Of a stretch of DNA of 64,000 nucleotides, positions 1,203 through 43,994 are shown piece by piece. This stretch comes from Octopus sinensis (Eukaryota): contig NC_042998.1 of the NCBI RefSeq assembly GCF_006345805.1, positions 171,244,001-171,308,000 of the forward strand, in the 5' to 3' direction. Every line of letters starts with the position of its first letter. The stretch's first letter is position 1. Under the pieces are notes generated by a model. The model searched no databases, had not been told where the DNA came from, and saw only the letters and a list, made by a program, of their open reading frames with translations. The position numbers were made by a program, and so were the translations under genes.

Positions 1203-1674
1203 ATATATGTGTATATATATATATATGTGTGTGTATATATATATATGTGTGTATATATATGTATATATGTATGTATATGTATACAGGTATATGCTTGTAT
1301 GTATATGTATATATACGTTTATATGTATATATGTATAATACATGTATATATGTATATATACGTATATATATGTATATATATTTATTATATATATATATGT
1401 ATATATATATATATGTATCGATATATATATGTGTGGTATATATATTATACATATGTATATATATATATATATATGTATGTATATATATGTATATATATAT
1501 ATGTATCTATGTATATGTATATATAATATATATATATGATATATATGGGTACATATGTATATTAATGTATATATATATATATATATATATTGTATATATA
1601 CATATATATATGTATATATTGTATATATATGTATATGTATATATATGTATATGTATATATATGTATATAATATA

Positions 1675-1721
<47 letters not shown>

Positions 1722-1737
1722 ATATATATATATATAT
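1203..1737. repeat. Compound (TA)n/(TATG)n microsatellite
   Basis: Directly visible. Confidence 0.97.
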
Positions 1738-1995
1738 GTGGAGGCGCAATGGCCCAGTGGAATCGCAGTCGGAGGATCGCAGTTTCGTTTTCCAGACCGG
1801 ACGTTGTGTGTGTTTATTGAGGGAAACACCTAAAGCTCCACAAGGTTCCGGCAGGGGGTGTTGGCGACCCCTGTTGCACTCTTTCGCCCCAACTTTCTCT
1901 CACTCATTCTTCCTGTTACGTATTATCTGGATTGGCCACAGAAACCGGGAAACCGGGCCCATGAGCCTGGTTAGGCTTGAAAAGGGCGCAAAAAA
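1738..1995 (+). mobile_element. tRNA-derived SINE (family 1, head GTGGAGGCGCAATGGCCCAGTGG)
   Basis: A-box-like TGGCCCAGTGG and a degenerate B-box. The same head and body occur at 16084-16258 (-). Ends in an A-run. Confidence 0.8.
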
Positions 1996-2487
1996 TGTAT
2001 ATATATAGGTATATATACATATAGGTATATATATGTATATATATATATATATGCATATATATGTATATATATATATACGTATTTGTATGTATATATATAT
2101 ACGTATATATATGTATATATCTATATATATATACATATATGTATATGTATATATGTATATATGTATATGTATATATGTATATGTATATATATGTATATAT
2201 ATACATATATATATACATACATATATACATATATATATATATAAATATATATACATATATATATATACATATATATACATATATATATATACATGTATAT
2301 GTATATATGTAAATATATATATACGTATATATATGTATATATATATGTATATGTATATATATGTATATATGTACATATATATATATATGCATATATATGC
2401 AGATATATATGTGTATATATATATATATATGTATATATATATAAGTACATATAAATGTATGTATATGTATATATATATATGTATAAT
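1996..2487. repeat. Compound (TA)n/(TATG)n/(CATA)n microsatellite
   Basis: Directly visible. Confidence 0.97.
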
Positions 2488-2898
2488 AATAAGCAACAGG
2501 ATATCCTGTTGCTTATTTTGATTTTATTCACCTTATTTGAAACTTTATGGATAATTCTGCAGTAATTTTTGTTGCCTCAACTTAAATAACTAATACATCT
2601 GAATCTCAATTATTTTACTATATGTATGTATATATGTAAGTGTATACATAGTAATTTGAATATTGTGGGAAAACGAATTTCCAAATCAATCAGGTACAGT
2701 CCTTTAGCATTACATGCATCTGCATATCGTGCAATGGGGTCTTGATTAAAAAATATGTATTTATCTAGAAATATACAAAATACACAATAGAAATTAATAA
2801 GAATTCACCTTCCGATATACTCGTTATGTTATTTTTTGCATAATCTGAAATAGAATACCCACATATCTATTAATGCCAAAAATTGATTTAAGTTTATA

Positions 2899-3206
<308 letters not shown>

Positions 3207-3342
3207 GGGGAAAATAAGTTCAGATGAGAACACTTCAAAGTTTTTGAAACGTCCAAAAAAGAGAGAAAGAATAATTTCTAATAAAGATTCATCATATTCA
3301 TTAAAAAAAACACCCAGAGCAACTAATAAAAATATGAAAATA

Positions 3343-3936
3343 ATAGTTGAAAATATCTTTATAGTTATAAATATACCATAAACAATTATAGAAAAATGGA
3401 GGAGAAAAAGATGTTGAATCAAAATTAGATTTAATACAAAACAGGATTCAATACTTACGCGCATTTCAAAGGACAATACAAACATGTAAGAAAAAGATTA
3501 TAACCATAGTAATTATAATTAGATTTATGCATTGCCATTTTCATCAGTGTGAGTAATTTTTGTAAGGACATCAAAAAATAATATAAATTAAATTAAAATA
3601 AGATACAGTAAGGGAGAATACAAATGGGTAAGAGGGAAAACGTCGGATATTTACAAACAAGTTGTAAAAGGGAAAAAATAACGGTAATAATAATAGTAAG
3701 AGAAGCGAAAGAGAAAGAAAGCCAGACATATCAATGTGTATGCACGTCTATATGTGCGGTGAACTATAACAAAAATAAGAACAAAAATCTACCGGATGTG
3801 TTTAAAAAATGGTAATTGGTCGAGACGAAGTATAGTAAATAGTGCTACGTGTGTATAGTATAATATAACGTAACATGTGGATTAGTAGAAAAAAGACCAA
3901 AGAGAGTTATAGATATACATATTAATATTGAAAAGC

Positions 3937-4005
<69 letters not shown>

Positions 4006-4334
4006 CATACGAAGTTAAAAGTGATAGGCAAGACGATGCTTGAAAGAAGTTACAATATTTAAGTAAAAATGTACATACATGCAGAGAAAAAATCACTGAT
4101 GAAAATGACAAGGCATAAATTTGTCCACTGATGAAAACGAAAATGCATAAATCTACTTATAATTACTATGGTTATAATCTTTTTCTGGCAAATTTGTATT
4201 GTCCTTTGAAACGCGAATATGTATTGAATCCAGTTTTGTATCAAATCTAATTTTGATTGAACATATTTTTCTCCTCCATTTTTCTATAATGGTTTATGGC
4301 ATATTTATACCTATAACGATATTTTTTCAACTAT
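3343..4334. repeat. Diverged inverted repeat pair (3343-3549 vs 4094-4334), possibly Penelope pLTR-derived
   Basis: The reverse complement of 4094-4334 aligns to 3343-3549 along its length. The right arm has an internal duplication of the CACTGATGAAAA segment. Confidence 0.75.
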
Positions 4335-4788
4335 ATATATATATCTATGTGTAATATATATATATATTTATGCATGTGTGTGTGTGTGTGTGTATGTGTG
4401 TATATACATATAAGCGTACATACATATGTGTATATGTATATATGTTATATATATATATATATAATATATATATTATATATATATATTATATATATATATA
4501 TAATATATAATATATATAATATATAATATATATATATATATCTATATATGTGTGTGTGTGTATGGAAAAAAGTCAAGATAGAAAATGCTAAAATAATTCT
4601 ATAAAAAACATTTCAGAACCGGTTTCAGTCATTGACACATTTTCAACTGTAACAATCAAAGAATCTAATTTAGGAAAATTAACGGAAAAGTTTTTTTTTA
4701 AAAGAATATTTGTAGAGTGTTCAAATACAAGTGGCATTTTCCTTGTTTCTGCCTGTCTCTGTCTCTCTTGTTTACTCTTATATATATA

Positions 4789-5624
4789 CTAGCAGAATTG
4801 CCCGGCGTTGCTCGGGGCTGAATTACTTGAAAGTACTGTTAATGATTGCACTGAATGATGATGATTATTCAGGCAAATATTGATATAAGTTTACGCTGGG
4901 AGATAAGGACTTAACGATCAAACGTGTGCCATTGCATTGTTTTGGGGGAACCAAATTTCTGATGAGCATTATAGGGGCACCAACTTTAAGTTTGAGAATG
5001 TGTGGTTGTAGTCCGGGGTGCTCAAAGGAATTGAGTACCTCTATTGGATAGTTGATGACGTCCTCTGGGTCAGGAGTTGTATCGATAGACTGATATACAT
5101 AGACTTCCCCAGGAATGAGTTTTAGCATTTCATCATTAATATGGTGAACAGTTTTATTCCTCGGGGCCAGTATAGCCTTTTTGCAATCCAATCCATATTC
5201 TGATAATTAGCTTGTAGATCTTGGAACACTGCATCAGAAGGCGTCTTAACAATGGTACAAATGGAATCGATGGCAATATTACCATTTTCATCCCCTGGTA
5301 TTTTGCCTTCGCCAAGTGCAATGAGGGTGTGAGGAAGCTGCTGCTGATGTGATATTACGTCGCATATGAGCACGCATATTGGTGTGAAGTTTGAGAGTTA
5401 CTTCCCTTAATTTTAAAAAATGCATTAAAATGGGAAAAAATTATGGTAAATTATTTGTAAAATCGTAGACTCATCGTAGACGCGCGCTAATACCCAGAAG
5501 GGCTCGATATGAATCACGACTATAAGATACTCGGTTTTGGTTAAACTGCATCGCAAAATGTGGGAGTAGTTAGGAATCTAAATCGGAGTAGACAGACACA
5601 CAACCTTTCTTTTATATATAAAGA
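4789..5624 (-). mobile_element. Non-autonomous Helitron (A-type ends) with a PIF1 helicase relic
   Basis: Minus strand reads A|TCTTTATATATAAAAG at the 5' end and CCCGAGCAACGCCGGG hairpin...CTAG|T at the 3' end, i.e. an A^T insertion site. Internal helicase fragment present. Confidence 0.9.
4865..5330 (-). pseudogene. Helitron RepHel PIF1-like helicase fragment, frameshifted
   Basis: AILAPRN, YQSID, LKLKVGAPIMLIRNL, CNGTRLIV are PIF1/Helitron helicase motifs. Confidence 0.9.
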
Positions 5625-5625
5625 T

Positions 5626-7098
5626 TTTCGTCCTAAAAACTTTGTATGGAGTGAATGGTTACCTCTATGGAAATATATACACACACATTATACATACATG
5701 TGTGTATAGATGAATATATAAATACATTAAATATCTATATGCACTTTTGGACGATCTTTCTGCTTCTTAGAGATAACTTTAGATGTTATTTTCGTCCTAA
5801 AAACTTTGTGCGGAGTGAATGGTTACCTCTATGGAAATATATACACACACATTATACATACATGTGTGCATAGATGAATATAAATACATTTAAATATCTA
5901 TATACACTTTTGGGCGATCTTTCTGCTTCTTAGAGATAACTTTAGATGTTATTTTCGTCCTAAAAACTTTGTGCGGAGTGAATGGTTACCTCTATGGAAA
6001 TATATACACACACGTTATACATACATGTGTGCATAGATGAATATATAAATACATTAAATATCTATATACACTTTTGGGCGATCTTTCTGTTTCGTAGAGA
6101 TAACTTTAGATCTTATATTCGTCCTAAATAACTTTGTATGGAGTGAATGGTTACCTCTATGGAAATATTACACACACATTATACATACATGTGTGTATAG
6201 ATGAATATATAAATACATTTAAATTCTATATACACTTTTGGGCGATCTTTCTGTTTCTTAGAGATAACTTTAGATCTTATATTCGTCCTAAATAACTTTG
6301 TATGGAGTGAATGGTTACCTCTATGGAAATATATACACACACGTTATACATACATGTGTGCATAGATGAATATATAAATACATTTAAATATCTATATACA
6401 CTTTTGGGCGATCTTTCTGTTTCTTAGAGATAACTTTAGATCTTATATTCGTCCTAAAATACTTTGTATGGAGTGAATGGTTACCTCTATGGAAATATAT
6501 ACACACACATTATACATACATGTGTGTATAGATGAAAATATAAATACATTTAAATATCTATATACACTTTTGGGCGATCTTTCTGTTTCTTAGAGATAAC
6601 TTTAGATCTTATATTCGTCCTAAATAACTTTGTATGGAGTGAATGGTTACCTCTATGGAAATATATACACACACATTATACATACATGTGTGTATAGATG
6701 AAAATATAAATACATTTAAATATCTATATACACTTTTGGGCGATCTTTCTGTTTCTTAGAGATAACTTTAGATCTTATATTCGTCCTAAATAACTTTGTA
6801 TGGAGTGAATGGTTACCTCTATGGAAATATATACACACAGATTATACATACATGTGTGTGTCTATATACACTTTTGGACGACTGCTACTTAGAGATAACT
6901 TTAGATGTTATTTTCGTCCTAAAAAACTTTGTGCGGAGTGAATGGTTACCTCTATGGAAATATATACACACGTTATACATACATGTGTGTATAGATGAAT
7001 ATATAATACATTTAAATATCTATATACACTTTTGGGCGATCTTTCTGCTTCTTAGAGATAACTTTAGATGTTATATTCGTCCTAAATAACTTTGTATG
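5626..7098. repeat. Tandem satellite, about 9 units of 163-166 bp (one 133-bp deleted unit)
   Basis: Anchor CGTCCTAAA at 5629, 5793, 5956, 6120, 6284, 6450, 6616, 6782, 6915, 7078. Confidence 0.95.
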
Positions 7099-7322
7099 AA
7101 TTGAAAAAGTAACTGAATTGAAATTCTAAAAGAAAGGAATTTGTTTACATACATGTGTAAAATGGCAAATGTTTGTGCAGTTGTCCGATGGAACTGATGT
7201 ATTATAATGAATAGTCCTTCTTCTTGTGAATATTAATTTGATTAATATGAACTGAAAACCAGTGGTGTAGCATAGGTGATCTTCTAGCAAAAAGGATGAC
7301 CAGTCTGAATGGGTCGTCCCTG

Positions 7323-7455
7323 TCACACACACACACACACACCCACGTACCCTCACACCCACGCACACACACAACACACACACACACACACACACACACC
7401 ACACACAGACACACACACACAGACACACACGCACACACACACCACACACACACAC
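7323..7455. repeat. (CA)n microsatellite
   Basis: Directly visible. Confidence 0.95.
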
Positions 7456-7569
7456 GTTAGCTTACAATGTCTGTCAACAATTGACACTGTCGTATATATT
7501 AGCGTGTCTATGTGTCTAAAGAGGAAGTGGGAGTAATAGGCAGAGTAAAGGCTTCAAAGTGAAATGTTA

Positions 7570-8127
7570 AAATATTGAGTTTTCTCGAATTTTGTCTTAA
7601 TTGGGGGTGAAATTGAAAGAAATTTTGTATGGCATGAACCACTCGAATTTTGTCTTAATTGGGGGCGAAATTGAAAGAAATTTTGTATGGCATGAACCAA
7701 TGGAAGCTCTTTGAAAAATCATAGGTAAAGTCTAATTGAAGAAATTGTGTGAGGAGTAAATCATTATGTATTTATTTGTTTCTGTTTGCTGCTTTCTTTT
7801 TTTTTGAGTAGTGTTGTAAGGTAGACTTGCAAAGAGAAAGGAGAAATTAGGGTGATAGCGTCAGTGAAACGGTTCGCTCCGTTTGTGTGTGTTTGTGTAT
7901 GCGTGTGCTTTAACCCACACTAAGAAAAGCATTTGACATACACACCAGAATGTGAGTTTTCTGTAAATTTGCTTAATTGGAGTTGAAATTTGAAAAACTG
8001 GACCTGGCACGACCCGATGGATTCTACTCTTAAAAATGCTAGGTAAATTGTAATTGAAGAAATCCTATATTGTAGATTTCTATAAGTGACAAAGGAAGGC
8101 AGATAAAATCTGCCTTTTATAATAAGA
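7570..8127 (-). mobile_element. Helitron B-type 5' head module plus an older diverged copy with a 58-bp tandem duplication (7584-7699)
   Basis: Minus strand starts TCTTATTATAAAAGGCAGATTTTATCTGCC. Homologous to 9050-9294, 10950-11191, 12110-12347 and 13700-13958. Confidence 0.7.
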
Positions 8128-8520
8128 CTAGCAGTATCACCCGGCGTTGCTCGGGTTGTAAGGGAAATAACTATATAAGCATTTTAGAGAGTTATAGCCA
8201 AAAAATAGCAAAAAAATGCATTAAAAATTGAAAAAAAATTAAGGTAATTTTTTTTTAAATCGTTGACACATCGTAGATATTTTTAGAGAGTTACTTCCCT
8301 TATATAAAAGCGAAAAAAATGCATTAAAATGGAAAAATATGATGGTAAATTTTTTTAAAATCGTAGACTCATCGTAGACGCGCGCTAATACCCAGAAGGG
8401 CTCGATATGAATCACGACTATAAGATACCCGCTTTTGGTTAAACTGCACGGCAAAATGTGGGAGTAGTTACGAATGTAAATCGAAGGGGACAGACACACA
8501 ACTTCACTCTTATATAAAGA
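8128..8520 (-). mobile_element. Non-autonomous Helitron A module (393 bp)
   Basis: 5' A|TCTTTATATAAG, 3' hairpin plus CTAG, and an internal ~103-bp repeated module. Confidence 0.88.
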
Positions 8521-8843
8521 TGCTTTTTTTTTTCAGTCATAGAGTTAGATTTATGAAGGTCTTCAGTAGAAAATCCTTCGAATTCTGACTCGCTGCTTGA
8601 TATAATGAAATTCGTATCCATTTTTTGTCAGAATTACAATTTTGAAAACACAATAGGAACAAATTTCGGAAAAAAATCTCCCATAATTCACGGAATTAAA
8701 TTACACTTCGATTTTTGTACAAAACTGTATTTGAAGTGTTTACGAAGTATATACGTGTTTTCACGAATGTACTAAAGAGATTTACTCTGATATTCTCATT
8801 TAAATATGAATAGGTAAATTCGGGCGGTTTGGTAACGAAAGGG
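8521..8843 (-). mobile_element. piggyBac-like left end carried as cargo (second copy 11576-11898)
   Basis: Minus strand TAAA|CCCTTTCGTTACC resembles a TTAA|CCC piggyBac terminus. It is followed about 220 bp later by a short acidic ORF start MDTNFIISSSESEFEGFSTEDL. Confidence 0.45.
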
Positions 8844-9294
8844 TTTATATAAGTGTCGTTTGTTTATACATAAACACTGTTTCATAGTTTCAGTTTAGTC
8901 TTTCTCAAATCACTCTGTCGCTAATTTACTCTCTTCCAAGAACATTTTCACTCACTGTTATCTGTTAGCTTCCCATACATTTTACTCATGTATCTATCAG
9001 CGTGATAGACAGAAACAAATATTACATTTACTTTCATTTTATTCGTCGCACCTTGTGTGTGCGTTTGCGTGTGGTGTAAACCAGACTAAGAAAAGCATTT
9101 GACACACACACCAGAATGTGAGTTTTCTGTAAATTTTGCTTAATTGGAGTTTAAATTTTAAAAACTGGACTGGCATGACGCGATGCATTGTACTCTTAAA
9201 ACTGCTAGTAAATTGTAATTGAAGAAATCCTATATTGTAGATTTGTATAACTACCAAAGGGAGGCAGATAAAATCTGCCTTTTATAATAAGAGA
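8521..9294 (-). mobile_element. Helitron B head plus cargo (unit X, copy 1)
   Basis: Free 5' end A|TCTCTTATTATAAAAGG at 9294. Near-identical to 11576-12347. Confidence 0.75.
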
Positions 9295-9305
9295 TATATT
9301 ATATA

Positions 9306-9941
9306 CTAGCAGTATCGCCCGGCGTTGCTCGGTTGTAAGGGAAATAACTATATAAGCATTTTTAGAGAGTTATAGCCAAAAAAATAGCAAAAAATGCATT
9401 AAAAATGGAAAAATATGATGGTAAATTTTTTGAAAAATCGTTGACTCATCGTAGACATTTTTAGAGAGTTACTTCCCTTATATAATAGCGAAAAAATGCA
9501 TTAAAATGGAAAAAAAACGATGGTAAATTTTTTTTAAAATCGTAGACTCATGTAGACGCTTTCTTAGCCATTTCTGTTTTGGTGTCTTCAAGCCATGAAG
9601 TCGTTGTTCTAAAAGAACGCTGGTCTCCTTGACAACGCATTACGACGTTGATTTCCTTACACTCCCTTCCCCACAGGTGCAGGTGTGAGCGTGGACGCCA
9701 ACTCCGCCGCCATCGACACACGAAAAATTATGCATTAAAAATGGAATAAAAAATGATGTTAAATTATTTTTAAAATCGTAGACTCATCGTAGACGCGCGC
9801 TAATACTCAGACGGGCTCGATATGAATCACGACTATAAGCTACCCGAATTTGGTTAAACTGCACCGCAAAATGTGGGAGTAGTTTGGAATCTAAATCGAA
9901 GGGGACAGACACTCACACAACTACAGTTTTATATATATAGA
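9306..9941 (-). mobile_element. Helitron A module, longer variant with extra internal sequence (~9557-9720)
   Basis: CTAG at 9306-9309 with hairpin; 5' A|TCTATATATATAAAAC at 9941. Confidence 0.85.
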
Positions 9942-9984
9942 TATACATAGCGCAGTAGTGGTGAGATGTGACAGCAAAGAAAAG

Positions 9985-10393
9985 CATACATTCACTCTCT
10001 GCATGCAATTAGACTCGGAAAGTTCGTGAGGAACCCATTGACCCAATTTGCTGACTTTTCCGATAGCACACAGGTCTCACTGAATGGTTGAATGACCAAA
10101 TCCAAGCTTCTCTGCTAGTTCCTCAACAGTTACGATGAGATTTTGTTCCACCAGAGTTTTCAGGATGTCCTTGTCGAGTTCTACAGATCTTTCAGGATGA
10201 GGCAATCTTCTAGGCTGTTCCAATATAGCTTTGAAAAAAATAGCTGTTAAAATCGAAATGCACTCTTCAAAACTTGCACTATGAATAAGGACAAGATAAA
10301 ATACTACCTGCTTTTATAGCAAGTTAATATAAGTAGTTTATCCCATTCCCCTCTGACTTTTAGTTCAAGCTTTTGAAAAAACCGCATTATTAG
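9985..10393 (-). mobile_element. Mariner element 5' fragment, degraded
   Basis: Manual translation LVEQNLIVTVEELAEKLGFGHSTIQ*DLCAIGKVSKLGQWVPHELSESN contains the mariner WVPHEL motif. Confidence 0.85.
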
Positions 10394-10421
10394 ATATATA
10401 TACACATACATACATACAACA

Positions 10422-10453
<32 letters not shown>

Positions 10454-10675
10454 CCCACGCACTCTCTCTCTCACACACATGCACACATTTATATTCTGTT
10501 ATTCTTTTATATGTTTCAGCCTTGAGGTTGTGGCCATGCTGGATCATGTGTGTGTGTGTGTGTGTGTCTATCTGTCTGTCTGTCTGTATGTATATATGTA
10601 TATGTATGTGTGTGAACAATAATATTTTCAACAGATGTGTTGCAAATGTATCTGATTGTTCTCAAGCTTCAATAC

Positions 10676-10708
<33 letters not shown>

Positions 10709-10799
10709 ATGTATGTATGTATGTATGTGTGTATGTATGTATGGTGTGGTGTGTGTGTGTGTATGTATGTATGTATGTATGTATGTATGTATGAGTGTT

Positions 10800-11191
10800 C
10801 CTCAATCACTATCTCTGGCTATTTACTCTCTTCCAAGAACATTTTCACTCACACTTATGTGTTAGCTTCCCATACATTTTACTCATGTATCTATCAGCGT
10901 GATAGAGAGAAACAAATATTCATCTAGTTTCACTTTATTCGTTGCCCACTGTGTGTGTGCGTTTGCGTGTGGTGTAAACCAGACTAAGAAAAGCATTTGA
11001 CACACACACCAGAATGTGAGTTTTCTGTAATTTTGCTTAATTGGAGTTTAAATTTTAAAAACTGGACCTGGCATGACGCGATGCATTGTACTCTTAAAAT
11101 TGCTAGGTAAATTGTAATTGAAGAAATCCTATATTGTAGATTTGTATAACTCCCAAAGGGAGGCAGATAAAATCTGCCTTTTATAATAAGA
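10800..11191 (-). mobile_element. Helitron B head plus partial X cargo
   Basis: Homologous to ~8900-9292. Joined directly to the CTAG at 11192. Confidence 0.75.
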
Positions 11192-12347
11192 CTAGCAGTA
11201 TCGCCGCGTTGCTCGGTTGTAAGGGAAATAACTATATAAGCATTTTTAGAGAGTTATAGCCAAAAAAATAGCAAAAAATGCATTAAAAATTGAAAAAATT
11301 AAGGTAAATTTTTTTTAAAATCGTTGACACATCGTAGATATTTTTAGAGAGTTACTTCCCTTATATAAAAGCGAAAAAATGCATTAAAATGGAAAAATAT
11401 GATGGTAAATTTTTTTTAATCGTAGACTCATCGTAGACGCGCGCTAATACCCAGAAGGGCTCGATATGAATCACGACTATATACCCGCTTTTGGTTAAAT
11501 GCACGGCAAAATGTGGGAGTAATTACGAATGTAAATCGAAGGGGACAGACACACAACTTCACTCTTATATAAAGATGCTTTTTTTTTTCAGTCATAGAGT
11601 TAGATTTATGAAGGTCTTCAGTAGAAAATCCTTCGAATTCTGACTCGCTGCTTGATATAATGAAATTCGTATCCATTTTTTGTCAGAATTACAAATTTTG
11701 AAAACACAATAGGAACAAATTTCGGAAAAAAATCTCCCATAATTCACGGAATTAAATTACACTTCGATTTTTGTACAAAACTGTATTTGAAGTGTTTACG
11801 AAGTATAACGTGTTTTCACGAATGTACTAAAGAGATTTACTCTGATATTCTCATTTAAATATGAATAGGTAAATTCGGGCGGTTTGGTAACAAAAGGGTT
11901 TATATAAGTGTCGTCTGTTTATACATAAACACTGTTTCATAGTTTCAGTTTAGTCTTCCTCAAATCACTGTCGCTAATTTACTCTCTTCCAAGAACATTT
12001 TCACTCACTGTTATTTGTTAGCTTCCCATACATTTTACTCATGTATCTATCAGCGTGATAGAGAGAAACAAATATTACATTTACTTTCATTTTATTCGTT
12101 CCCACTGTGTGTGTGCGTTTGCGTGTGGTGTAAACCAGACTAAGAAAAGCATTTGACACACACACCAGAATGTGAGTTTTCTGTAAATTTTGCTTAATTG
12201 GAGTTAAAATTTTAAAAACTGGACCTGGCATGACGCGATGCATTGTACTCTTAAAACTGCTAGGTAAATTGTAATTGAAGAATCCTATATTGTAGATTTG
12301 TATAACTCCCAAAGGGAGGCAGATAAAATCTGCCTTTTATAATAAGA
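11192..12347 (-). mobile_element. Composite Helitron unit (B head + X cargo + A module), 1156 bp
   Basis: CTAG at 11192 and the next CTAG at 12348. Near-identical to 8128-9294. Confidence 0.85.
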
Positions 12348-12625
12348 CTAGCAGTATCGCCCGGCGTTGCTCGGGTTGTAAGGGAAATAACTATATAAGC
12401 ATTTTTAGAGAGTTATAGCCAAAAAGTAGCAAAAAATGCATTAAAAATTGAAAAAAAATTAAGGTAAATTTTTCTTTAAATCGTTGACACATAGTAGATA
12501 TTTTTAGAGAGTTACTTCCCTTATATAAAAGCGAAAAAAATGCATTAAAATGGAAAAATATGATGGTAATTTTTTTTTAAATCGTAGACTCATCGTAGAC
12601 GCGCGCTAATACCCAGAAGGGCTCG
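12348..12625 (-). mobile_element. Helitron A module 3' part; its 5' ~110 bp is replaced by satellite
   Basis: CTAG and hairpin at 12348. Homology stops at ...GGGCTCG (12625). Confidence 0.85.
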
Positions 12626-13341
12626 TTTGTTATTCTGGGTACTTTCTGTAAAATTATTAAAATTTTGTTCAAACATCGCTATAGAAAATGGGTTATTAGC
12701 TAATATTCAATTGGGTATACAACAAAATTTTACGATAGAATTTGTTATTCTGGGTAACTTCTGTAAAATTATTAAAATTTTGTTCAAACATCGCTATAGA
12801 AAATGGGTTATTAGCTAATATTCAATTGGGTATACAACAAAATTTTACGATAGAATTTGTTACTCTGGGTAACTTTCTGTAAAATTATTAAAATTTTGTT
12901 CAAACATCGCTATAGAAAATGGGTTATTAGCTAATATTCAATTGGGTATACAACAAAATTTTACGATAGAATTTGTTATTCTGGGTAACTTTCTGTAAAA
13001 TTATTAAATTTTGTTCAAACATCGCTATAGAAAATGGGTTATTAGCTAATATTCAATTGGGTATACAACAAAATTTTACGATAGAATTTGTTATTCTGGG
13101 TAACATTCTGTAAAATTATTAAAATTTTGTTCAAACATCGCTATAGAAAATGGTTATTAGCTAATATTCAATTGGGTATACAACAAAATTTTACGATAGA
13201 ATTTGTTATTCTGGGTAACTTTCTGTAAAATTATTAAAATTTTGTTCAAACATCGCTATAGAAAATGGGTTATTAGCTAATATTCAATTGGGTATACAAC
13301 AAAATTTTACGATAGAATTTGTTATTCTGGGTAACTTTCTG
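12626..13341. repeat. Tandem satellite, about 6.2 units of 115-116 bp
   Basis: Unit starts at 12626, 12741, 12856, 12972, 13087, 13202, 13318. Units are nearly identical. Confidence 0.96.
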
Positions 13342-13659
13342 ATACCCCATAATATTTATGGCAAAATAGGCCTTAATTTCATTTAAGGTTGTGGAAATAA
13401 CTAACTATCCTTTCTTTCGTTTGTTTACGTTTAGCGTAACAGTTCGTTTCTGCCGTAATGATTTCAAATGGGCTCATTCGAAAAAGTAAATAGAAATAGT
13501 GTAAGGCTTTACTCTTCTGGGAAAGTCTGTGGCTTAGTGCAGTTTCTTCAGAAAAATCACCGAAAAAACAGTTTTTAAATTTTCACTCCATTCAGGTGCT
13601 AATTCGTGTTCTTAATCGCTGTCGGATTCACTGTTTTCACTTTAATAGCTGCCAACTTG

Positions 13660-13956
13660 CAAAGACAAAGGAGGAGAAGGGTGATAGCGTGAGTGAAACA
13701 ATTCGCTCCCTTTGTGTGTGTGTGTGTTTGCGTGTGGTGTAAACCAGACTAAGAAAAGCATTTGACACACACACCAGAATGTGAGTTTTCTGTAAATTTT
13801 GCTTAATTGGAGTTTAAATTTTAAAAACTGGACCTGGCATGACGCGATGCATTGTACTCTTAAAATTGCTAGGTAAATTGTAATTGAAGAAATCCTATAT
13901 TGTAGATTTGTATAACTCCCAAAGGAGGCAGATAAAATCTGCCTTTTATAATAAGA

Positions 13957-13958
<2 letters not shown>
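13660..13958 (-). mobile_element. Helitron B-type 5' head with a free end in (TA)n
   Basis: A|TCTCTTATTATAAAAGGCAG at 13958. Downstream cargo variant shared with 7826-7900. Confidence 0.75.
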
Positions 13959-13994
<36 letters not shown>

Positions 13995-14159
13995 ATATAT
14001 ATATATATATTATGTGAAATAGAAAGATGAATAATCTTGTAGTGGATTAATCAAAAGTTTAACCGATACCTTAGTAGCAAAAATCACAGCAGTGAACAGC
14101 ACGGTTGGAGGTACAACCATCTGGCGTTTCAACCGTGCGTTGGTGCGGATAATTGAAAT

Positions 14160-14291
14160 TAAAACATTATTGGTGAATTGAAGAAATGGAGCTGAACGCA
14201 GATTGAACAGAAATCGTTTTATAAAACGATTTCTGTTTATAAAACGATTCTGTTCAATCTGCGTTCAGCTCCATTTCTTCAATTCACCAAT

Positions 14292-14300
<9 letters not shown>
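14160..14300. repeat. Near-perfect fold-back inverted repeat (~60-bp arms)
   Basis: 14160-14220 vs 14241-14300, one 1-nt indel. Confidence 0.93.
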
Positions 14301-14355
<55 letters not shown>

Positions 14356-14540
14356 ACATGTATGTATATACATATATATATATATGTATATATGCATATA
14401 TATACATATGTATATATATGTATATGTATATATGTATATATATATATGTATATATATGTATATATGTATACATATATATATGTATATATATATCATATAT
14501 ATTATGTATATATATATATATGTATATATATATGTGTATA

Positions 14541-14720
14541 TATTTTCCAGGACTGCCATGTTAGCTTGGCGATAAATATTACTATCCAGTACTGCTGTCG
14601 TAATCTCCTTTATATATATATATTAATATTAATATTTTAAAATCTCTCTAAAGGAGATTACGGCAGCAGTACTGGACAGTAATATTTATCGCCAAGCTAA
14701 CATGGCAGTCCTGGAAAATA
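14541..14720. repeat. Inverted repeat, 72-bp arms, 36-bp AT loop
   Basis: 14541-14612 vs 14649-14720, 2 mismatches. Confidence 0.93.
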
Positions 14721-17199: not shown

Positions 17200-17690
<491 letters not shown>

Positions 17691-17820
17691 AACTATGCCA
17701 TTTTAATACCGAGCAACGCGGTGTATCTCTGTTAGTTGGTATTAAGCCAAGGATTTGATATTAGGAAGAAATGGAAGGCTGTCGAAATAGCATTTCTTGC
17801 ACTATATATGGTACAGATAA

Positions 17821-19621: not shown

Positions 19622-22600
19622 GGTACCGGGGACGTAAGAAGACACCGGGGACGTTTAAGATGTAAGAAGGAAAATACAGATCTCCGAAATCTATCCACAA
19701 ACATCGAAAACAAGGACACCCTATGGAGCCAAAGATTTACTAACAAAGAATTGGACTATATCCGAGTAAGTAATACGAATTGAAATTTATTACTATTTTC
19801 GAAACGAAATGATGTATTTTGACTCGATATTATCTCCACCTCTAACACAACACATGTAAACATGCGTGGAACAACACGATCACCCCCGACCTCAAACACC
19901 ATGTACAAAGGAACTACGAAGAAATTAAATGCCACCGATACTATTCAACCCAAGAATAACAATCGAGCGGTACGTACATTAAACCTACAACAAAAAATGT
20001 ACGAAAAACTACACGTGCGAAATAATGTGACAACAGAAATAAACGGACCGGTACCCTACGAAAATGACGACCGTCAAAATAATGGGCCGGACGTTGTACC
20101 TCATGTCCCGCAATTAAAACCCAAAAGACGTAAATGGACACGTGAGGAATACATTTCTATCTTACACGCATACTTCACAGCAATGCTCTACCCACAAAAT
20201 GAAAATACAACAACACATACATATAAAATATGGAAGGAAAATAATAGAGATATAGACTTGGATACAGCAATGAACCCTAATAAATTAGCTAACGTACGAA
20301 GATACATTCTCAAAGCCAAAAAAATATCAGAAATAGAAATAGAACATTTAAAAGAAAAAATACACCAGGAAAATGTAGATAGAAGCCACACAACAATGCC
20401 CAATAATATAAACACTGAAACTGTAAAACACGAAGACAAACGCAACATTCCCAACAAACACGATGTAAACAACGAAGGGGAGCCTAATGATTATGATAAT
20501 ATAAAAAATAAAATAATCAAAGAACTAAAAACCACAGAGCTCAAAATGGACCACCGACCATATCTCCCAAGAATAAAAATAAACGCAATAACACACCAAT
20601 TATAAACAACATAAACCTAGCCGTCACTGAACTAGCCACTGAAACAAAAAAAAGTGATATCACTGAACTAAATGACTTGATATACGCAGCAGCCACTGCA
20701 GCCACAAAAGAAGCTGGATACTCACCCAAACCCGCCCAAACAGGAGTACCACCACCCAAACAAACCCTGTGGATAAATAACATCCAAAACAAAATAAAAA
20801 AAATTAGAAAAGACCTGTCGATTCTTAATGAAATCAGCAAACAAGCAACGCTACTGAGCAACAAAAAGAGAACAAAAATGCTCCGCAAATATAACATCAC
20901 AGAAAAGATTTGCCGGAGATAAAAGAAAAGCTGAAGCAAGATATCCTTGCCAAAGCTCAAAGGATCCGCCGATACGAGAAACGCCAACGCTTCTTTGAAC
21001 AGAACAAAAAGTTCAACTCCGACCCCAAAAAGTTCTACCAAGAACTGGGCAAAAATAAAATAGACGTCACTGCAGCACCAACGGCAGAAGAATTGGAAGA
21101 ATTCTGGAAAGAAATATGGTCGGCGAACGAACAGCCAAAAAAAAGGAGTATGAAAATAACAAACTCGGCATCTGAACAACTTTGGACCCCCATAACAACT
21201 GAAGAGGTCACCCAGGCACTGCAAAAACTAAGCAACTGGAAGGCACCTGGGCATGACAAGATCCCCAACTTCTGGTTGAAATATCTAACAGGAATGCACA
21301 AAAAGCTGGCTGAAAACTTTAACAGCATACTAGCAGAGCCAGAGACAATGCCTGAATGGCTCACGAAGGGGAAAACCATCTTAATTCCCAAATCAAATGA
21401 AACAACAAAACCAGAAAATTACAGACCAATAACCTGCCTCCCTACTATGTTCAAGGCATTTACTGCAGTGATATCGCAAAGGCTGAACAAGCACCTGGAC
21501 GAAAACAAACTGTTCCCAGAAGAGCAGAAAGGATGCCGCAAGGGCTCATATGGCTGTAAAGATCAACTAATGATTAATAAAGCCGTAACTGAAACAGCCA
21601 CAGAAAGAAGAAAGGCCTCAGTATGGCCTGGATTGACTACAAAAAGGCGTTTGATAGCATCCCCCACACATGGATCCTTGAAACACTAGCCATTAACAAA
21701 GTAGCACCAACAATCATAAAATTCATAGAGCACTCTATGAATAAATGGCAAACAGTCCTACACCTCCAAACAAAAGAGGGACTCATGAAAACCAAAGACA
21801 TCCCCATTAGAAGAGGAATATTCCAGGGAGACACGCTCTCTTCACTCCTTTTCTGCTTGGCACTGTCACCTCTATCTGATATGCTAAATAGAACTGGATG
21901 CGGATATAAATGTTACGGCAAAACGATCAGCCACCTTTTATATATGGATGACCTAAAACTATACGCTGCAAATGACAAACAGCCGGAAACACTATTAAAG
22001 ACAGTTCATGGATTTACCAAAGAAATAGATATGAAATTTGGATTAGAAAAATGCGCCAAAGTACCATGAAAAGAGGAAAACTAGTTAAGAGTAACAACAT
22101 CACACTAGATAAAACCAATGAAATAAAAGAATTAGACCAAAGCCAAACTTACAAATACTTAGGAATCCATGAACTAGATAAGACACAACACACACAAATG
22201 AAAGAGAAAATAAAAAAAGAATATTATAGACGAGTTAGATCAATACTAAAAACAGAGCTCAATGCTAAAAACAAGATAATAGGTATCAACACTTTAGCTG
22301 TCCCAGTTATAAGTTACAGCTACAATATGGACACGAAATGAACTGTCCAAAATAGATAGGAAACAAGAAAAATACTGACAGGATCTAGGATGCATCACCA
22401 AAATCTGACATAGAAAGACTATATATACAACGTATAGAAGGTGGTAGAGGCCTTATACAGCTGGAAAACTACTATAAAATAACCACCATAGGACTGCAAA
22501 AATACCTACTTCAGAAGAAGGAAAACTGATCCAGATAGCAGCAAAACACGAGCAAAACAAAAAACTGTTCTCAGTATTTAAGGAAGCTGACAAATACAAA

Positions 22601-23578
22601 CAAGAAATCATACCACCTAATAACACAAAGAAGAAGAAGAAGATGATGAAGAAACAACAAAAGCTATAAAACAAATGAAATCCAAACTAAAAATAGAACA
22701 GCAACGAGCCATGATAAAACGATGGCAAGAAAAGCCCCTTCATGGTAAATACTGCACTAAACTAAACGCAAAAGAAATAGACAAAGAAAAATCCCAGCAA
22801 TGGTTGAGAAGCTCAGGACTCAAAGCAGAAACGAGGGATTTTTAATTGCAGCACAAGACCAAAGCCTCCCCACCAGAAATTACCAAAAACATGTAATGAA
22901 AAGAAATATTACAAGTAACTGCAGAATATGTGGAGATGGACAAGAAACAATAAATCATATTATCTCTAGCTGCCCAGTCCTGGCTAAGAAGGAATATTCA
23001 CAGACATGACAGAGTTGGAACCTACATACATTGGAAGCTATGCCAACATTATGAATAACAACAGAAAAAAGATGGTATAGGCACACACCAGAAAAGGTCA
23101 CAGAAAACGAGAAAGCAACCATACTCTGGGATATGCCGATACACACAGATAGAGAAATTAAGGCCAACAGACCAGATATAGTTGTCAGAGATCATGAAGA
23201 AAAAAAATGCTTTCTAATTGATGTATCAATACCGGCAGATGACAACGTGTCTCTAAAAGAAATGGAGAAACTCTCAAAATACAAAGACCTGGAAATAGAG
23301 GTAACTAGAATGTGGAACCTGAAAACAGAAACAATTCCTATCATAGTAGGTGCATTAGGCATGATAAAAAATATTCAAACAAATACATAACAAAAACACC
23401 AGGACTTACAAACACATATACATACAGAAAATTGCACTACTAGGCACTGCACACATCCTACGCAGAACACTTTCCATACAATAACCATCAGAGCATCACA
23501 ACAAATCACAGCACATACCCAAGGCACACAGAGCTGCGCTCGGTAGTGAAGTGAAAGCACGCTATAAAAATAAAACTA

Positions 23579-23581
<3 letters not shown>
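19621..23581 (+). mobile_element. Full-length R4/Dong-clade non-LTR retrotransposon (RT + CCHC + restriction-like endonuclease), multiple frameshifts
   Basis: KWTREE N-terminus; RT motifs WKAPGHD, NYRPITCL, WIDYKKAFDS, GIFQGD, YMDDLKLY; CRICG..ETINHIISSC knuckle; NRPDIVV..CFLIDV RLE; flanked by (TAA)n on both sides. Confidence 0.95.
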
Positions 23582-23610
<29 letters not shown>

Positions 23611-23923
23611 CTCTCAAAATACAAAGACCTGGAAATAGAGGTAACTAGAATGTGGAATCTGAAAACAGAAACAATTCCTATCATAGTAGGTGCATTAGGC
23701 ATGATAAAAAAATATTCAGACAAATACATAACAAAAACACCAGGACTTACAAACACATATAACATACAGAAAATTGCACTACTAGGCACTGCACACATCC
23801 TACGCAGAACACTTTCCATACAATAACCATCAGAGCATCACAACAAATCACAGCACATACCCAAGGCACACAGAGCTGCGCTCGGTAGTGAAGTGAAAGC
23901 ACGCTATAAAAATAAAACTACTG
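23611..23923 (+). mobile_element. 5'-truncated copy of the same Dong family, lying in the (TAA)n tail of the full-length copy
   Basis: Near-identical to 23271-23581. (TAA)n on both sides. Confidence 0.93.
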
Positions 23924-24503
23924 AATAATAATAATAATAAAATTACGCCCACACTTGCATAAATTTCGGAACATTCTTCATTTGTAAAATATTGTCTAAT
24001 CTAAGTCTGGGTTTGAAATTTACCTGCCGACAATTTCCAGACTTTAAACAAACTCCATGCTAAGAATTAACACTTTTATAGCGTGAATAGACTCTTCAAT
24101 GCCAAGTTGCTGCTTTATATCATTTTATTCACTTCAACTATGAAAGAAGTCACAGATCACAGTGTTAAGACAAAATTTGTGACTTTTCAACGTCAGTATT
24201 TGTCAAATTGAAAAATAGCTCGATAACTTGCAGGGATGATTTGAAATTATACTTCCCATGTTACACTGCATGGAGATGAAATATTTGATGATAGCCCTAT
24301 CATTCAATGAAGAGATTTGTTAAACCTTTTCCAATGATTTGATTAAATACGCTGTCAGAAAATTTCTCTAGTTTCCCCCCAAAATGATTTGATTCTTCAA
24401 GCATACAAATTGGATTTCTGTCGTTTCTCTTTAGCTACATTGCCAAACAATTCATTAGAGTATCATCGCCGCACCACCACCACCTCTTCTTCTTCTTCTT
24501 CTT

Positions 24504-35931: not shown

Positions 35932-36882
35932 GATGAAGATGAAGAAACAACAAAAGCTATAAAAAAAATGAAATCCAAACTAAAAATAGAACAGCAACGA
36001 ACCATGATAAAACGATGGCAAGAAAAGCCCCTTCATGGTAAATACTGGACTAAACTAAACGCAAAAGAAATAGACAAAGAAAAATCCCAGCAATGGTTGA
36101 GAAGCTCAGGACTCAAAGCAGAAACAGAGGGATTTTTAATTGCAGCACAAGACCAAAGCCTCCCCACCAGAAATTACCAAAAACATGTAATGAAAAGAAA
36201 TATTACAAGTAACTGCAGAATATGTGGAGATGGACAAGAAACAATAAATCATATTATCTCTAGCTGCCCAGTCCTGGCTAAGAAGGAATATATTCACAGA
36301 CATGACAGAGTTGGAACTTACATACATTGGAAGCTATGCCAACATTATGGAATAACAACAGAAAAAAGATGGTATAGGCACACACCAAAAAAGGTCACAG
36401 AAAACGAGAAAGCAACCATACTCTGGGATATGCCGATACACACAGATAGAGAAATTAAGGCCAACAGACCAGATATAGTTGTCAGAGACCATGAAGAAAA
36501 AAAATGCTTTCTAATTGATGTATCAGTACCGGCAGATGACAACGTGTCTCTAAAAGAAATGGAGAAACTCTCAAAATACAAAGACCTGGAAATAGAGGTA
36601 ACTAGAATGTGGAATCTGAAAACAGAAACAATTCCTATCATAGTAGGTGCATTAGGCATGATAAAAAATATTCAGACAAATACATAACAAAAACACCAGG
36701 ACTTACAAACACATATAACATACAGAAAATTGCACTACTAGGCACTGCACACATCCTACGCAGAACACTTTCCATACAATAACCATCAGAGCATCACAAC
36801 AAATCACAGCACATACCCAAGGCACACAGAGCTGCGCTCGGTAGTGAAGTGAAAGCACGCTATAAAAATAAAAATAAAACTA

Positions 36883-42703: not shown

Positions 42704-43078
<375 letters not shown>

Positions 43079-43176
43079 AAAAAAGGTTTGAAAATGCAAT
43101 TTAAACGATGTTTATTTACTTAACCGGTTTCACTCTTTGGTAAAAGATTGTCAAAAGTTACATTTAAGGAAACATT

Positions 43177-43402
43177 GAATAATATGGGTTCAAAAAAAGT
43201 TTTTTACATAATTGTCACATTGAATATTATGCATTCAAAAAAGTTTTTTACATAATTGTCACATTGGATATTATGGGTTCAAAAAAAGTTTTTTACATAA
43301 TTGTCACATTGAATATTATGCATTCAAAAAAGTTTTTTACATAATTGTCACATTGGATATTATGAATTCAAAAATGTTTTTTTATACATAATTGTCACAT
43401 TA
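43177..43402. repeat. Minisatellite, 5 units of 44-47 bp with ABAB dimeric pattern
   Basis: ACATAATTGTCACATT at 43206, 43250, 43295, 43339, 43386. Confidence 0.92.
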
Positions 43403-43621
43403 TTTGGGAAAATTTGGCAGAAAAGGATAAAACAAATATATTATTGGGAATTGGTTGCGTTAATTATTGGTTGTCGCAAATTGTCACATTACATGTATAT
43501 ATATATACAATCTTTGGTATATATATACAGCGTTTTGACAGCAAAAATTAAAATGGATTTTTTGTACATCTCAGAATATTTTAAGTATGTTTTTACTGAC
43601 CTGTCAGTATTAGCAGAAAGG

Positions 43622-43661
<40 letters not shown>

Positions 43662-43671
43662 ATATATATAT

Positions 43672-43715
<44 letters not shown>

Positions 43716-43734
43716 TATATATATATATATATAC

Positions 43735-43770
<36 letters not shown>

Positions 43771-43994
43771 TATATATATATATATATATAATATATATAT
43801 ATATACATACATACACACACCCACACACATATATATATACATATACACATATGTATGTATACATGTGTGTGTGTATATTTATAGGCATACACACATACAC
43901 ACACATAAACATATACACGTATACATACATTATTATACGTGTGCGCGCGGTCACACACACACACATATATATATCAATATATATTGTGGATATA

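What the first reader, a model, noticed from the sequence alone, without database searches (positions are those of the whole stretch)
4789..13958. 9.2-kb train of five head-to-tail Helitron units with constant ends and interchangeable cargo
Seen, on the minus strand: five consecutive units each begin with the same head (TC(TC)TTATTATAAAAGGCAGATTTTATCTGCC, 7-bp hairpin) and end with the same hairpin-CTAG tail. Unit 13958-12348 carries a 116-bp satellite; 12347-11192 a piggyBac-like end; 11191-9306 microsatellites and a mariner fragment; 9294-8128 a piggyBac-like end; 8127-4789 a 165-bp satellite and a PIF1 relic. Four units also keep a second, internal TC head. Three junctions are direct CTAG|TCTTATT fusions lacking 2 nt relative to the two free heads (A|TCTCTTATT); the fourth has an 11-bp TA spacer. 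Known: Helitrons use rolling-circle transposition, can form tandems, acquire new 5' ends and capture DNA. Inference: a modular cargo-shuttling Helitron system that either concatemerises or targets its own ends.
Basis: partly seen in the sequence, partly recalled or inferred. Interest (0 to 1): 0.8.

Follow-up and report, generated by a model that had tools for sequence, protein, structure and literature searches.

The report
Five joined Helitron transposons in a microsatellite
A 9.2-kb stretch holds five related rolling-circle (Helitron) transposons joined head to tail inside a TA repeat, each a patchwork built on an older, smaller Helitron; it is a clean example of known Helitron behaviour, not a new kind of system.

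Summary
On the minus strand, 13958-4789 contains five same-orientation units. Each starts with an identical 28-nt head and ends in ...CGAGCAACGCCGGG..CTGCTAG. Three joints are direct CTAG|TCTTATT and one has an 11-nt TA spacer. The whole cluster lies in a (TA)n tract. The satellites, the mariner fragment, the Pif1 helicase relic and the four internal TC heads are confirmed. The 'piggyBac-like' label found no support in any search.

The units are composite, non-autonomous canonical Helitrons. Each has a 'B' 5' end (245-400 bp), captured DNA, and an older short 'A' Helitron that supplies the 3' end. This is the published end-bypass or composite-transposition pattern. The units are not clonal. 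Heads differ by 0.8-10%, tails by 1.2-6.4%, and head and tail histories disagree for unit 3. A single rolling-circle concatemer of one element is therefore excluded.

Precise heteromeric joints most likely come from transposase-mediated end joining, or from insertion at a resident's 5' nick site. Two separate hits into one microsatellite would then give the two blocks.

Tandem and abutting Helitrons, satellite cargo and constant ends with variable cargo are all published. No other copy exists in the window or in the searchable collections, so the genome-wide tests could not be run. Interest is modest.

The parts
13959..14010 (.). (TA)n microsatellite flanking the 5' end of the cluster. The last base before the first head is A.
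12348..13958 (-). Unit 1 (1611 bp). It has a free head TCTCTTATT..., a B block to about 13655, unidentified DNA, the 115/116-bp satellite (12626-13341), then only the 3' 278 bp of an A element (12625-12348). It has no internal TC head.
11192..12347 (-). Unit 2 (1156 bp).
9306..11191 (-). Unit 3 (1886 bp). Head fused directly to the unit 2 tail, B block 11191-10794, microsatellites (10404-10793), a mariner transposase fragment (about 9950-10223), and a nested A Helitron at 9941-9306 that carries a ~160-bp GC-rich insert (about 9720-9560). Its tail is 4.4-6.4% diverged from the other tails.
9295..9305 (-). 11-nt spacer TATATAATATA between the unit 3 tail and the unit 4 head. It reads as a remnant of the TA microsatellite and has the canonical flanks CTAG|T ... 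A|TC.
8128..9294 (-). Unit 4 (1167 bp). Free head TCTCTTATT. It is a full-length homologue of unit 2 (24 substitutions in 1151 aligned positions, 2.1%; 15 indels, 9 of them in homopolymers). The nested A Helitron lies at 8520-8128.
4789..8127 (-). Unit 5 (3339 bp). Head fused directly to the unit 4 tail, B block 8127-7825 (7-10% from the others), a second diverged B-like piece (about 7745-7646), a 58-bp x2 repeat (7584-7699), (CA)n (7324-7455), the 165/166-bp satellite (about 7105-5625), and a nested element at 5624-4789.
4789..5624 (-). Nested element of unit 5. It consists of an A-type 5' end (236 bp, about 85-87% identical to the other A heads), a frameshifted and truncated Pif1-helicase relic (4865-5373), 76 nt, then the tail CCCCGAGCAACGCCGGGCAATTCTGCTAG. 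It reads as an internally deleted autonomous Helitron. It sits at GAAAA|T of a satellite monomer.
13926..13944 (-). Head hairpin AGGCAGAT-TTT-ATCTGCCT, starting 13-15 nt from the 5' end. The same hairpin is at 12317-12335, 11161-11179, 9262-9280 and 8097-8115. A-type heads have no such hairpin.
4779..4788 (.). TA-rich 3' flank (TATATATATA, then AGAG...). The first base after the last CTAG is T.

Best explanation
The region is a cluster of five non-autonomous canonical Helitrons of one family, all in the same orientation. They are lodged in a (TA)n microsatellite as two blocks, units 1-2-3 and units 4-5, separated by 11 nt of that microsatellite.

Each unit is a composite:
- a 'B' 5' end, made of the TC terminus, an 8-bp hairpin and 245-400 bp of shared sequence;
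- then captured DNA (satellite, microsatellites, a mariner piece, unidentified DNA);
- then an older short 'A' Helitron whose CTAG end serves as the unit's terminator. This A element is complete in units 2, 3 and 4 and 5'-truncated in unit 1. In unit 5 it is a deletion derivative of the autonomous element that still carries part of the helicase gene.

Such units arise when rolling-circle transposition starts at an upstream 5' end and stops at the 3' end of the next Helitron downstream. This is end bypass, or composite transposition.

The five units are different family members, not copies made in one event. Their exact CTAG|TC joints are the joint the RepHel transposase makes when it closes a Helitron circle. 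I infer that the joints were made by the transposase in one of two ways. Either circular or rolling-circle intermediates of different members became joined or recombined into heteromeric multimers that then integrated. Or an incoming element integrated at the transposase nick site at the 5' end of a resident element. Two separate integrations into the same microsatellite gave the two blocks.

Shown: the anatomy, the composite build, the non-clonality and the TA target. Inferred: the joining mechanism.
For: Helitron identity:
- 5' TC in 5/5 B heads and 4/4 A heads.
- 3' CTAG in 5/5 units.
- The flank is A before every free or nested head (6/6) and T after both free tails.
- No terminal or subterminal inverted repeats.
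- The Pif1_2B relic (E 2.4e-14) is on the same strand and ends 76 nt before a tail. It is collinear with Helitron helicases up to ...NGTRL(I/A)(V/I)K.L.
- B and A heads resemble each other over their first ~15 nt.

Composite build:
- Complete nested A elements of 384 and 393 bp lie at the 3' side of units 2 and 4.
- In unit 5 the nested head sits at GAAAA|T of a satellite monomer. Intact monomers continue TAACATC, yet the satellite does not resume after the CTAG. The upstream half of an A insertion site was carried along and the downstream half left behind.

Unit of duplication: units 2 and 4 match over their full length. The match is 2.1% substitutions.

Non-clonality:
- Heads differ by 0.8-10%, tails by 1.2-6.4%, and the cargo differs.
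- Unit 3's head is close to the others but its tail is distant (Fisher p 0.01-0.02).

Transposase-made joints: precise TC-to-CTAG junctions are the experimentally shown product of Helitron circle formation (PMC4778049).

Published parallels:
- Helitrons whose 5' end abuts another's 3' end occur in bats.
- Composite transposition using the ends of two copies is documented (PMC4224331).
Against: - This is a single locus. No other copy of either end exists in the other 54 kb of the window or in the metagenome, prokaryote-genome or viral collections. Pairing frequencies, donor loci and empty sites are therefore unknown.
- The 3' hairpin is not better than shuffled sequence.
- No Rep (HUH) domain is present in the window.
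- B's 5' end is never seen with a 3' end of its own, so how B came to lie upstream of several different A copies is unexplained.
- The extra TC on the two free heads is not predicted by any simple version of the model.
- The assembly shows homopolymer-type indels, and the array cannot be checked against reads.
Confidence: 0.55

Rival explanations
1. A single rolling-circle concatemer of one element was integrated as a homogeneous tandem array. The units later diverged through gene conversion or recombination with dispersed family members, and through internal insertions and deletions.
For: Rolling-circle concatemers are the standard explanation for Helitron tandem arrays in plants (Xiong et al. 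2016, as summarised in PMC12628747 and PMC11934779). Exact CTAG|TC joints are what a circle template gives. The shared 245-bp heads and 255-bp tails offer ample homology for conversion.
Against: There are four different cargo types in five units and three different A-type 3' partners. Head divergence reaches 10%. Every central region would have had to be replaced while the joints stayed intact. The published plant arrays are truncated copies with many 5' ends and one 3' end, whereas every unit here keeps its own 3' end.
Confidence: 0.12
2. The array arose by local recombination. Two or more independent insertions into the same microsatellite were followed by unequal crossing-over or segmental duplication, which built it without any transposase-made joint.
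For: TA microsatellites are dense here. The 11-nt spacer shows that at least two separate insertions hit the same tract. Units 2 and 4 are near-duplicates placed two units apart. Double insertion at preferred sites is a documented source of transposon dimers (McGurk and Barbash, as cited in PMC12628747).
Against: Unequal exchange between homologous heads or tails cannot by itself create a first exact CTAG|TC joint with zero microsatellite bases left. Three of four joints have zero spacing, although a 25-30-repeat tract offers many A|T sites. Units 3 and 5, which follow units 2 and 4, are not duplicates of each other.
Confidence: 0.1
3. This is an assembly artefact. Dispersed copies that share 98%-identical heads and tails were chained together by a long-read assembler.
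For: Nine of 15 indels between units 2 and 4 lie in homopolymers, which suggests a noisy long-read assembly. The shared blocks of 245-280 bp could mislead an overlap step.
Against: A false join through a shared block would switch flanks inside the block. It would not manufacture three exact tail-to-head abutments that never occur in the true genome. The units are only 1.2-3.3 kb, well within single long reads. The outer flanks form a coherent TA tract.
Confidence: 0.08
4. B is not a Helitron 5' end. It is a separate repeat or 'landing pad', and A-type Helitrons insert exactly upstream of it.
For: B has a strong 5' hairpin that A heads lack. B has no 3' end of its own. A diverged B-like piece without the terminus exists inside unit 5.
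Against: Free B heads are preceded by C (of TCTC) or, read the other way, start with TC after an A. That is a Helitron start, not an A|T target left intact. B's first ~15 nt resemble A heads. Units 2 and 4 are homologous as whole B-to-A units. The model also needs five B copies with unrelated spacers to have pre-existed in 9 kb.
Confidence: 0.05

Closest known systems
Composite or chimeric Helitrons made by end bypass (Tempel et al. 2007 model; HelibatN539 in bats, PMC4224331; read-through shown experimentally with Helraiser, PMC4778049)
   Same: [quoted passage not shown] Here the downstream copy is still visible as a nested TC...CTAG element in four units. In unit 5, half of that copy's satellite target site came along.
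   Different: Here the same B 5' end is paired with at least three different A-type 3' partners. No 3' end belonging to B itself is seen. The parental loci could not be examined.
Abutting and tandem Helitron insertions (Myotis: 5' end of one abuts the 3' end of another, PMC4778049; three copies in tandem in Metarhizium acridum, PMC5148889; tandem insertions reported in bat, Drosophila, rice and maize, cited there)
   Same: Same-orientation Helitrons are joined end to end. The literature already offers the same two explanations: insertion at another element's end, or rolling-circle replication of a circle.
   Different: This is a five-unit train of non-identical members with three exact joints and one microsatellite spacer. 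The fused heads are 2 nt shorter than the free heads.
Rolling-circle-amplified Helitron arrays of plant centromeres (Xiong, Dooner and Du 2016, as summarised in PMC12628747 and PMC11934779)
   Same: Head-to-tail Helitron arrays attributed to the rolling-circle intermediate.
   Different: The plant arrays are many near-identical truncated copies, typically with many 5' ends and one 3' end. Here there are five full units, each with both ends and different cargo.
Satellite-carrying non-autonomous Helitron/Helentron elements (Cg_HINE in Crassostrea gigas, PMC7492417; DINE-1/DINE-TR1 in Drosophila, PMC4067079)
   Same: A conserved 5' block ends in a microsatellite, followed by a variable stretch, a central tandem repeat and a conserved 3' block. 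Related flanks occur with different tandem repeats.
   Different: Those are Helentrons, with subterminal inverted repeats and insertion at T|T. The elements here have TC...CTAG ends, A|T flanks and no inverted repeats.

Membership tests
Canonical Helitron (HLE1) | 5' terminus TC | tested here: met
   5/5 B heads and 4/4 nested A heads start with TC.
Canonical Helitron (HLE1) | 3' terminus CTRR, usually CTAG | tested here: met
   5/5 units end in CTGCTAG.
Canonical Helitron (HLE1) | Short palindrome or hairpin about 10-20 nt upstream of the 3' end | tested here: inconclusive
   A CCCG..CGGG-type imperfect GC stem ends 12 nt before the 3' end. Its stability is -4.5 and -4.3 kcal/mol with z -0.9 and -0.5, no better than shuffles.
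Canonical Helitron (HLE1) | Insertion between A and T without target-site duplication | tested here: met
   A precedes both free B heads and all four nested A heads, and T follows both free tails. One nested head lies at A|T within a satellite monomer whose intact copies show the uninterrupted site. Absence of a duplication cannot be judged for the outer flanks because both are (TA)n.
Canonical Helitron (HLE1) | RepHel transposase (HUH Rep plus Pif1-like helicase) in autonomous members | tested here: inconclusive
   Only a truncated, frameshifted helicase piece is present (Pif1_2B_dom, E 2.4e-14). It is on the same strand and ends 76 nt before a tail. There is no Rep domain in the window. The nearest relatives are 50-60% identical, and one lies in a locus with Helitron_like_N plus PIF1 genes.
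Canonical Helitron (HLE1) | Dispersed copies with empty-site evidence | not testable with these tools
   No further copy exists in the window. There were no hits in the metagenome, prokaryote-genome or viral collections. The source genome is not in the protein collection.
Helentron / Helitron2 (HLE2, HINE) | Subterminal or asymmetric terminal inverted repeats; insertion at T|T | tested here: not met
   No head-tail inverted repeat is present beyond a 13-nt, 85% match that is absent from unit 5. The flanks are A|T.
Rolling-circle concatemer array (plant centromere type) | Units are copies of one template, near-identical, often truncated, with many 5' ends and one 3' end | tested here: not met
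   There are four cargo types, heads differ by 0.8-10%, every unit has its own 3' end, and unit 5 has a different 3' partner.
Composite (end-bypass) Helitron | The 5' end of one element and the 3' end of another in the same orientation with foreign DNA between; the second element's own 5' end may persist inside | tested here: met
   Nested complete A elements are present in units 2, 3 and 4, and a nested helicase-bearing derivative in unit 5. The unit 5 satellite is cut at the A|T site and does not resume. Parental loci were not testable.

The most novel reading that the evidence does not exclude
The transposase of this family regularly joins the 3' end of one Helitron to the 5' end of a different one. 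It would do so either by trans end-joining of intermediates or by integrating at the nick it makes at a resident's 5' end. The result is heteromeric trains that can move in whole or in part and that reshuffle heads, cargo and tails. The 2-nt difference between free (TCTC) and fused (TC) heads would then be the mark of that reaction.
Probability: 0.15. Interest if true: 0.6.

Novelty: new member of a known kind. Interest (0 to 1): 0.3.

Why it matters
If the joints recur genome-wide, this family would give natural evidence on a poorly documented step of Helitron transposition: what the transposase does with ends from different elements. It would also show how satellites and transposon fragments are packaged and spread. 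As it stands, the locus is a tidy single example of three published behaviours in one place: composite formation by end bypass, satellite cargo, and tandem or abutting insertion. It is useful for annotation. Repeat maskers would otherwise split it into unrelated pieces or call the shared ends a 1.2-kb tandem repeat.

Tried and rejected
1. Public DNA scans for the head (24-mer) and tail (26-mer, degenerate) in metagenome, GTDB genome and viral contigs gave 0 hits.

2. Other copies in the window: BLAST of all units against the window gave only microsatellite hits outside 4789-13958. Motif searches found one weak tail-like site at 17708-17734 on the plus strand.

3. Organism identity: the Pif1 relic and a LINE reverse-transcriptase ORF have no relatives above 60% identity. 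Contigs of the best Pif1 hits (marine metagenomes and a 1.49-Mb ENA contig) do not carry this tail. A cephalopod origin is only a lead. It rests on the best named Pif1 hit being Octopus sinensis at 50% and on a SINE-like repeat that I recall from octopus genomes.

4. piggyBac cargo: there was no support from Pfam, PDB sequences or the 5.8-billion-protein search with stitched fragments, and no second terminal copy. By eye, unit 1 cargo resembles the start of a piggyBac transposase core. I kept this as a lead only.

5. Helentron-type inverted repeats were not found.

6. Rfam and tRNA scans gave nothing in the window.

7. The idea that B is a read-through extension of A was rejected. The ends of the B blocks show no CTRR or hairpin, and they differ between subfamilies.

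Full report
**1. Observation**

The minus strand of 13958-4789 was read in full. The 28-nt head core occurs exactly five times, all on the minus strand, where no matches are expected by chance. The tail is found at four sites within three mismatches. The fifth tail, at the end of unit 2, differs only by two homopolymer contractions.

The junction table shows the following:
- Three direct CTAG|TCTTATT joints, at 12348/12347, 11192/11191 and 8128/8127.
- One joint with the 11-nt spacer TATATAATATA (9305-9295).
- Two free heads reading A|TCTCTTATT.
- An outer 3' flank reading CTAG|TATATATATA.

The cluster therefore sits inside a TA microsatellite.

The cargo was checked item by item:
- Tandem Repeats Finder confirms the 115/116-bp satellite (12626-13341, 6.2 copies, 98% matches) and the 166-bp satellite (5627-6859, 7.5 copies). 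Self-BLAST extends the second array to about 5625-7105.
- The mariner fragment matches Mos1 transposase residues 73-140 (E 4.7e-9).
- The helicase relic matches Pfam Pif1_2B_dom (E 2.4e-14).
- Four internal TC heads, each preceded by A, lie at 11575, 9941, 8520 and 5624.

Two details need correcting. The head hairpin is real (8 bp, z -3.35), but the tail 'hairpin' is no better than shuffled sequence. The 'piggyBac-like' label could not be supported by any search.

**2. Anatomy beyond the termini**

BLAST between units shows that the shared parts are far longer than the termini.
- All five units share a ~245-bp 5' block, here called B.
- Units 1 and 5 share it to about 304 bp, and units 2, 3 and 4 to about 396 bp. 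There are therefore two B subfamilies.
- Units 1-4 share a 255-280-bp 3' block.

In units 2 and 4 this 3' block is the end of a complete small Helitron, here called A. It is 384 and 393 bp long and runs from its own A|TC start to CTAG. The A element contains a ~100-bp internal duplication. In the other units the A element is altered:
- In unit 3 it carries a ~160-bp insert.
- In unit 1 only its last 278 bp remain.
- In unit 5 the first 236 bp of an A-type 5' end are followed by a frameshifted, truncated piece of a Pif1-type helicase gene on the same strand. After 76 nt comes a tail that resembles the other tails only in its last ~30 nt.

The unit 5 relic is collinear with Helitron helicases from other animals up to the NGTRL...K.L motif and then stops. 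The nested element of unit 5 thus reads as an internally deleted autonomous Helitron. The A family reads as its shorter derivative. B and A heads resemble each other over the first ~15 nt (TCTTATTATAAAAG against TCTTTATATATAAAAG). No inverted repeats link heads and tails.

**3. How each unit was built**

In unit 5 the nested head sits at GAAAA|T of a satellite monomer. The nine intact monomers continue TAACATC or TATAAGATC at that point. After the nested element's CTAG the satellite does not resume, and the TA flank follows instead. The upstream half of a Helitron insertion site travelled with the unit and the downstream half stayed behind.

This is the signature expected when transposition starts at an upstream 5' end (B) and stops at the 3' end of a Helitron lying downstream. 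It matches the end-bypass or composite model, which was documented for HelibatN539 (PMC4224331) and supported by Helraiser read-through experiments (PMC4778049). The same logic fits units 2, 3 and 4, where a complete A follows foreign DNA.

Units 2 and 4 are homologous over their whole length, with 24 substitutions in 1151 aligned positions (2.1%). Nine of the 15 indels lie in homopolymers, so part of the difference may be assembly noise. This is the only evidence within the window that a B-to-A unit is duplicated as a whole.

**4. The units are not clonal**

Substitution-only divergence is 0.8-3.3% among the heads of units 1-4 and 7-10% between those heads and unit 5. Among the tails of units 1-4 it is 1.2-6.4%. 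Unit 3's head is among the closest to the others, but its tail is the most distant (Fisher p 0.01-0.02). Its A head also differs. Heads and tails therefore have different histories.

With four cargo types and at least three different 3' partners, one rolling-circle run on one template cannot have produced this array.

**5. How the train formed (inferred)**

The exact TC-to-CTAG joint is the product shown experimentally when the Helitron transposase closes a circle. Random insertion into a 25-30-repeat TA tract would rarely leave zero bases between neighbours three times out of four. By contrast, the one 11-nt spacer, with canonical CTAG|T and A|TC flanks, looks like an ordinary second hit in the same tract.

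I therefore favour transposase-made joints, formed in one of two ways:
- Circles or rolling-circle intermediates of different members were joined or recombined through their shared blocks into heteromeric multimers, which then integrated. This would also explain the mosaic heads and tails.
- An incoming element integrated at the nick the transposase makes at a resident's 5' end.

Two integrations, a three-unit block and a two-unit block, would complete the picture.

The extra TC on both free heads is not explained. With five heads the perfect split has P = 0.1, so it may be chance.

Rivals are listed with their weights: a homogeneous concatemer later converted, local unequal exchange, misassembly, and B as a landing pad rather than a 5' end.

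**6. Comparison with what is known**

- Tandem insertions of Helitrons are reported in bat, Drosophila, rice and maize.
- Helitrons whose 5' end abuts another's 3' end occur in Myotis.
- Plant centromeric arrays are attributed to rolling-circle amplification. They consist of truncated near-identical copies with many 5' ends and one 3' end. That definition is not met here.
- Conserved flanks with interchangeable central satellites are described for oyster Cg_HINE elements and for DINE-1. Those are Helentrons, a membership not met here.

The structural criteria for a canonical Helitron (TC, CTAG, A|T; summarised in PMC13404089) are met. The exceptions are the statistically weak 3' hairpin and the absence of a Rep domain in the window.

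**6a. Limits**

No other copy of either end exists in the remaining 54 kb. The searchable public collections gave no hit. The source genome is not in the protein collection. They are specified as next steps.

**7. Verdict**

It is best read as a new family-level example of known Helitron behaviours: composite formation by end bypass, satellite and transposon-fragment cargo, and tandem joining. It is not a new kind of system. Interest is 0.3. The most novel reading still open is regular heteromeric end-joining by the transposase, at about 0.15 probability.

Noticed in passing
window 14160-14300: A perfect 53-nt inverted repeat (100% complementary) with a 35-nt spacer that is itself palindromic. 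It lies between two (TA)n tracts about 150 bp from the cluster. It is a foldback or MITE-like element.
   Followed up: partly
window 17400-17734 (+) and 10491-10543 (-): A SINE-like repeat is present, and a 53-nt piece of it also lies inside unit 3 cargo (79% identity). It ends in ACCGAGCAACGCGGTGTATCTCTGTTAG|T, which resembles the Helitron tail (2 mismatches in the 14-mer, 0.03 expected). This may be a decayed Helitron 3' end on the opposite strand. From memory the repeat resembles an abundant octopus SINE, which hints at a cephalopod source.
   Followed up: partly
window 13290-13582 (-), unit 1 cargo: Two short open stretches (…SPFEIITAETNCYAKRKQ… and …TLNEIKAYFAINIMGYQKV…) look by eye like the start of a piggyBac transposase core. 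The 116-bp satellite begins inside the second stretch, as if it were amplified from it. No tool supported the piggyBac assignment.
   Followed up: partly
window 9560-9720 (-), inside the nested A element of unit 3: A ~160-bp GC-rich insert of unknown origin is flanked by a duplicated ~70-bp piece of the A element. No protein family hit was found.
   Followed up: partly
window 7646-7745 (-), unit 5: A second, 74%-identical copy of part of the B block lies here without the TC terminus, next to a 58-bp x2 repeat. B-like sequence therefore exists outside the context of a 5' end.
   Followed up: no
window 19862-22069 (+) and 35968-36687 (+): Broken non-LTR retrotransposon reading frames are present (RVT_1 E 4e-17; zf-RVT E 2e-6). 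The best relatives are about 50% identical.
   Followed up: partly
window 1203-4549, 14299-14543, 42707-43813 and others: The density of TA, CA, TAA and ATAC microsatellites is very high across the window. There are also 342-bp x2 (23269-23940) and 44-bp x5 (43172-43401) tandem repeats.
   Followed up: no
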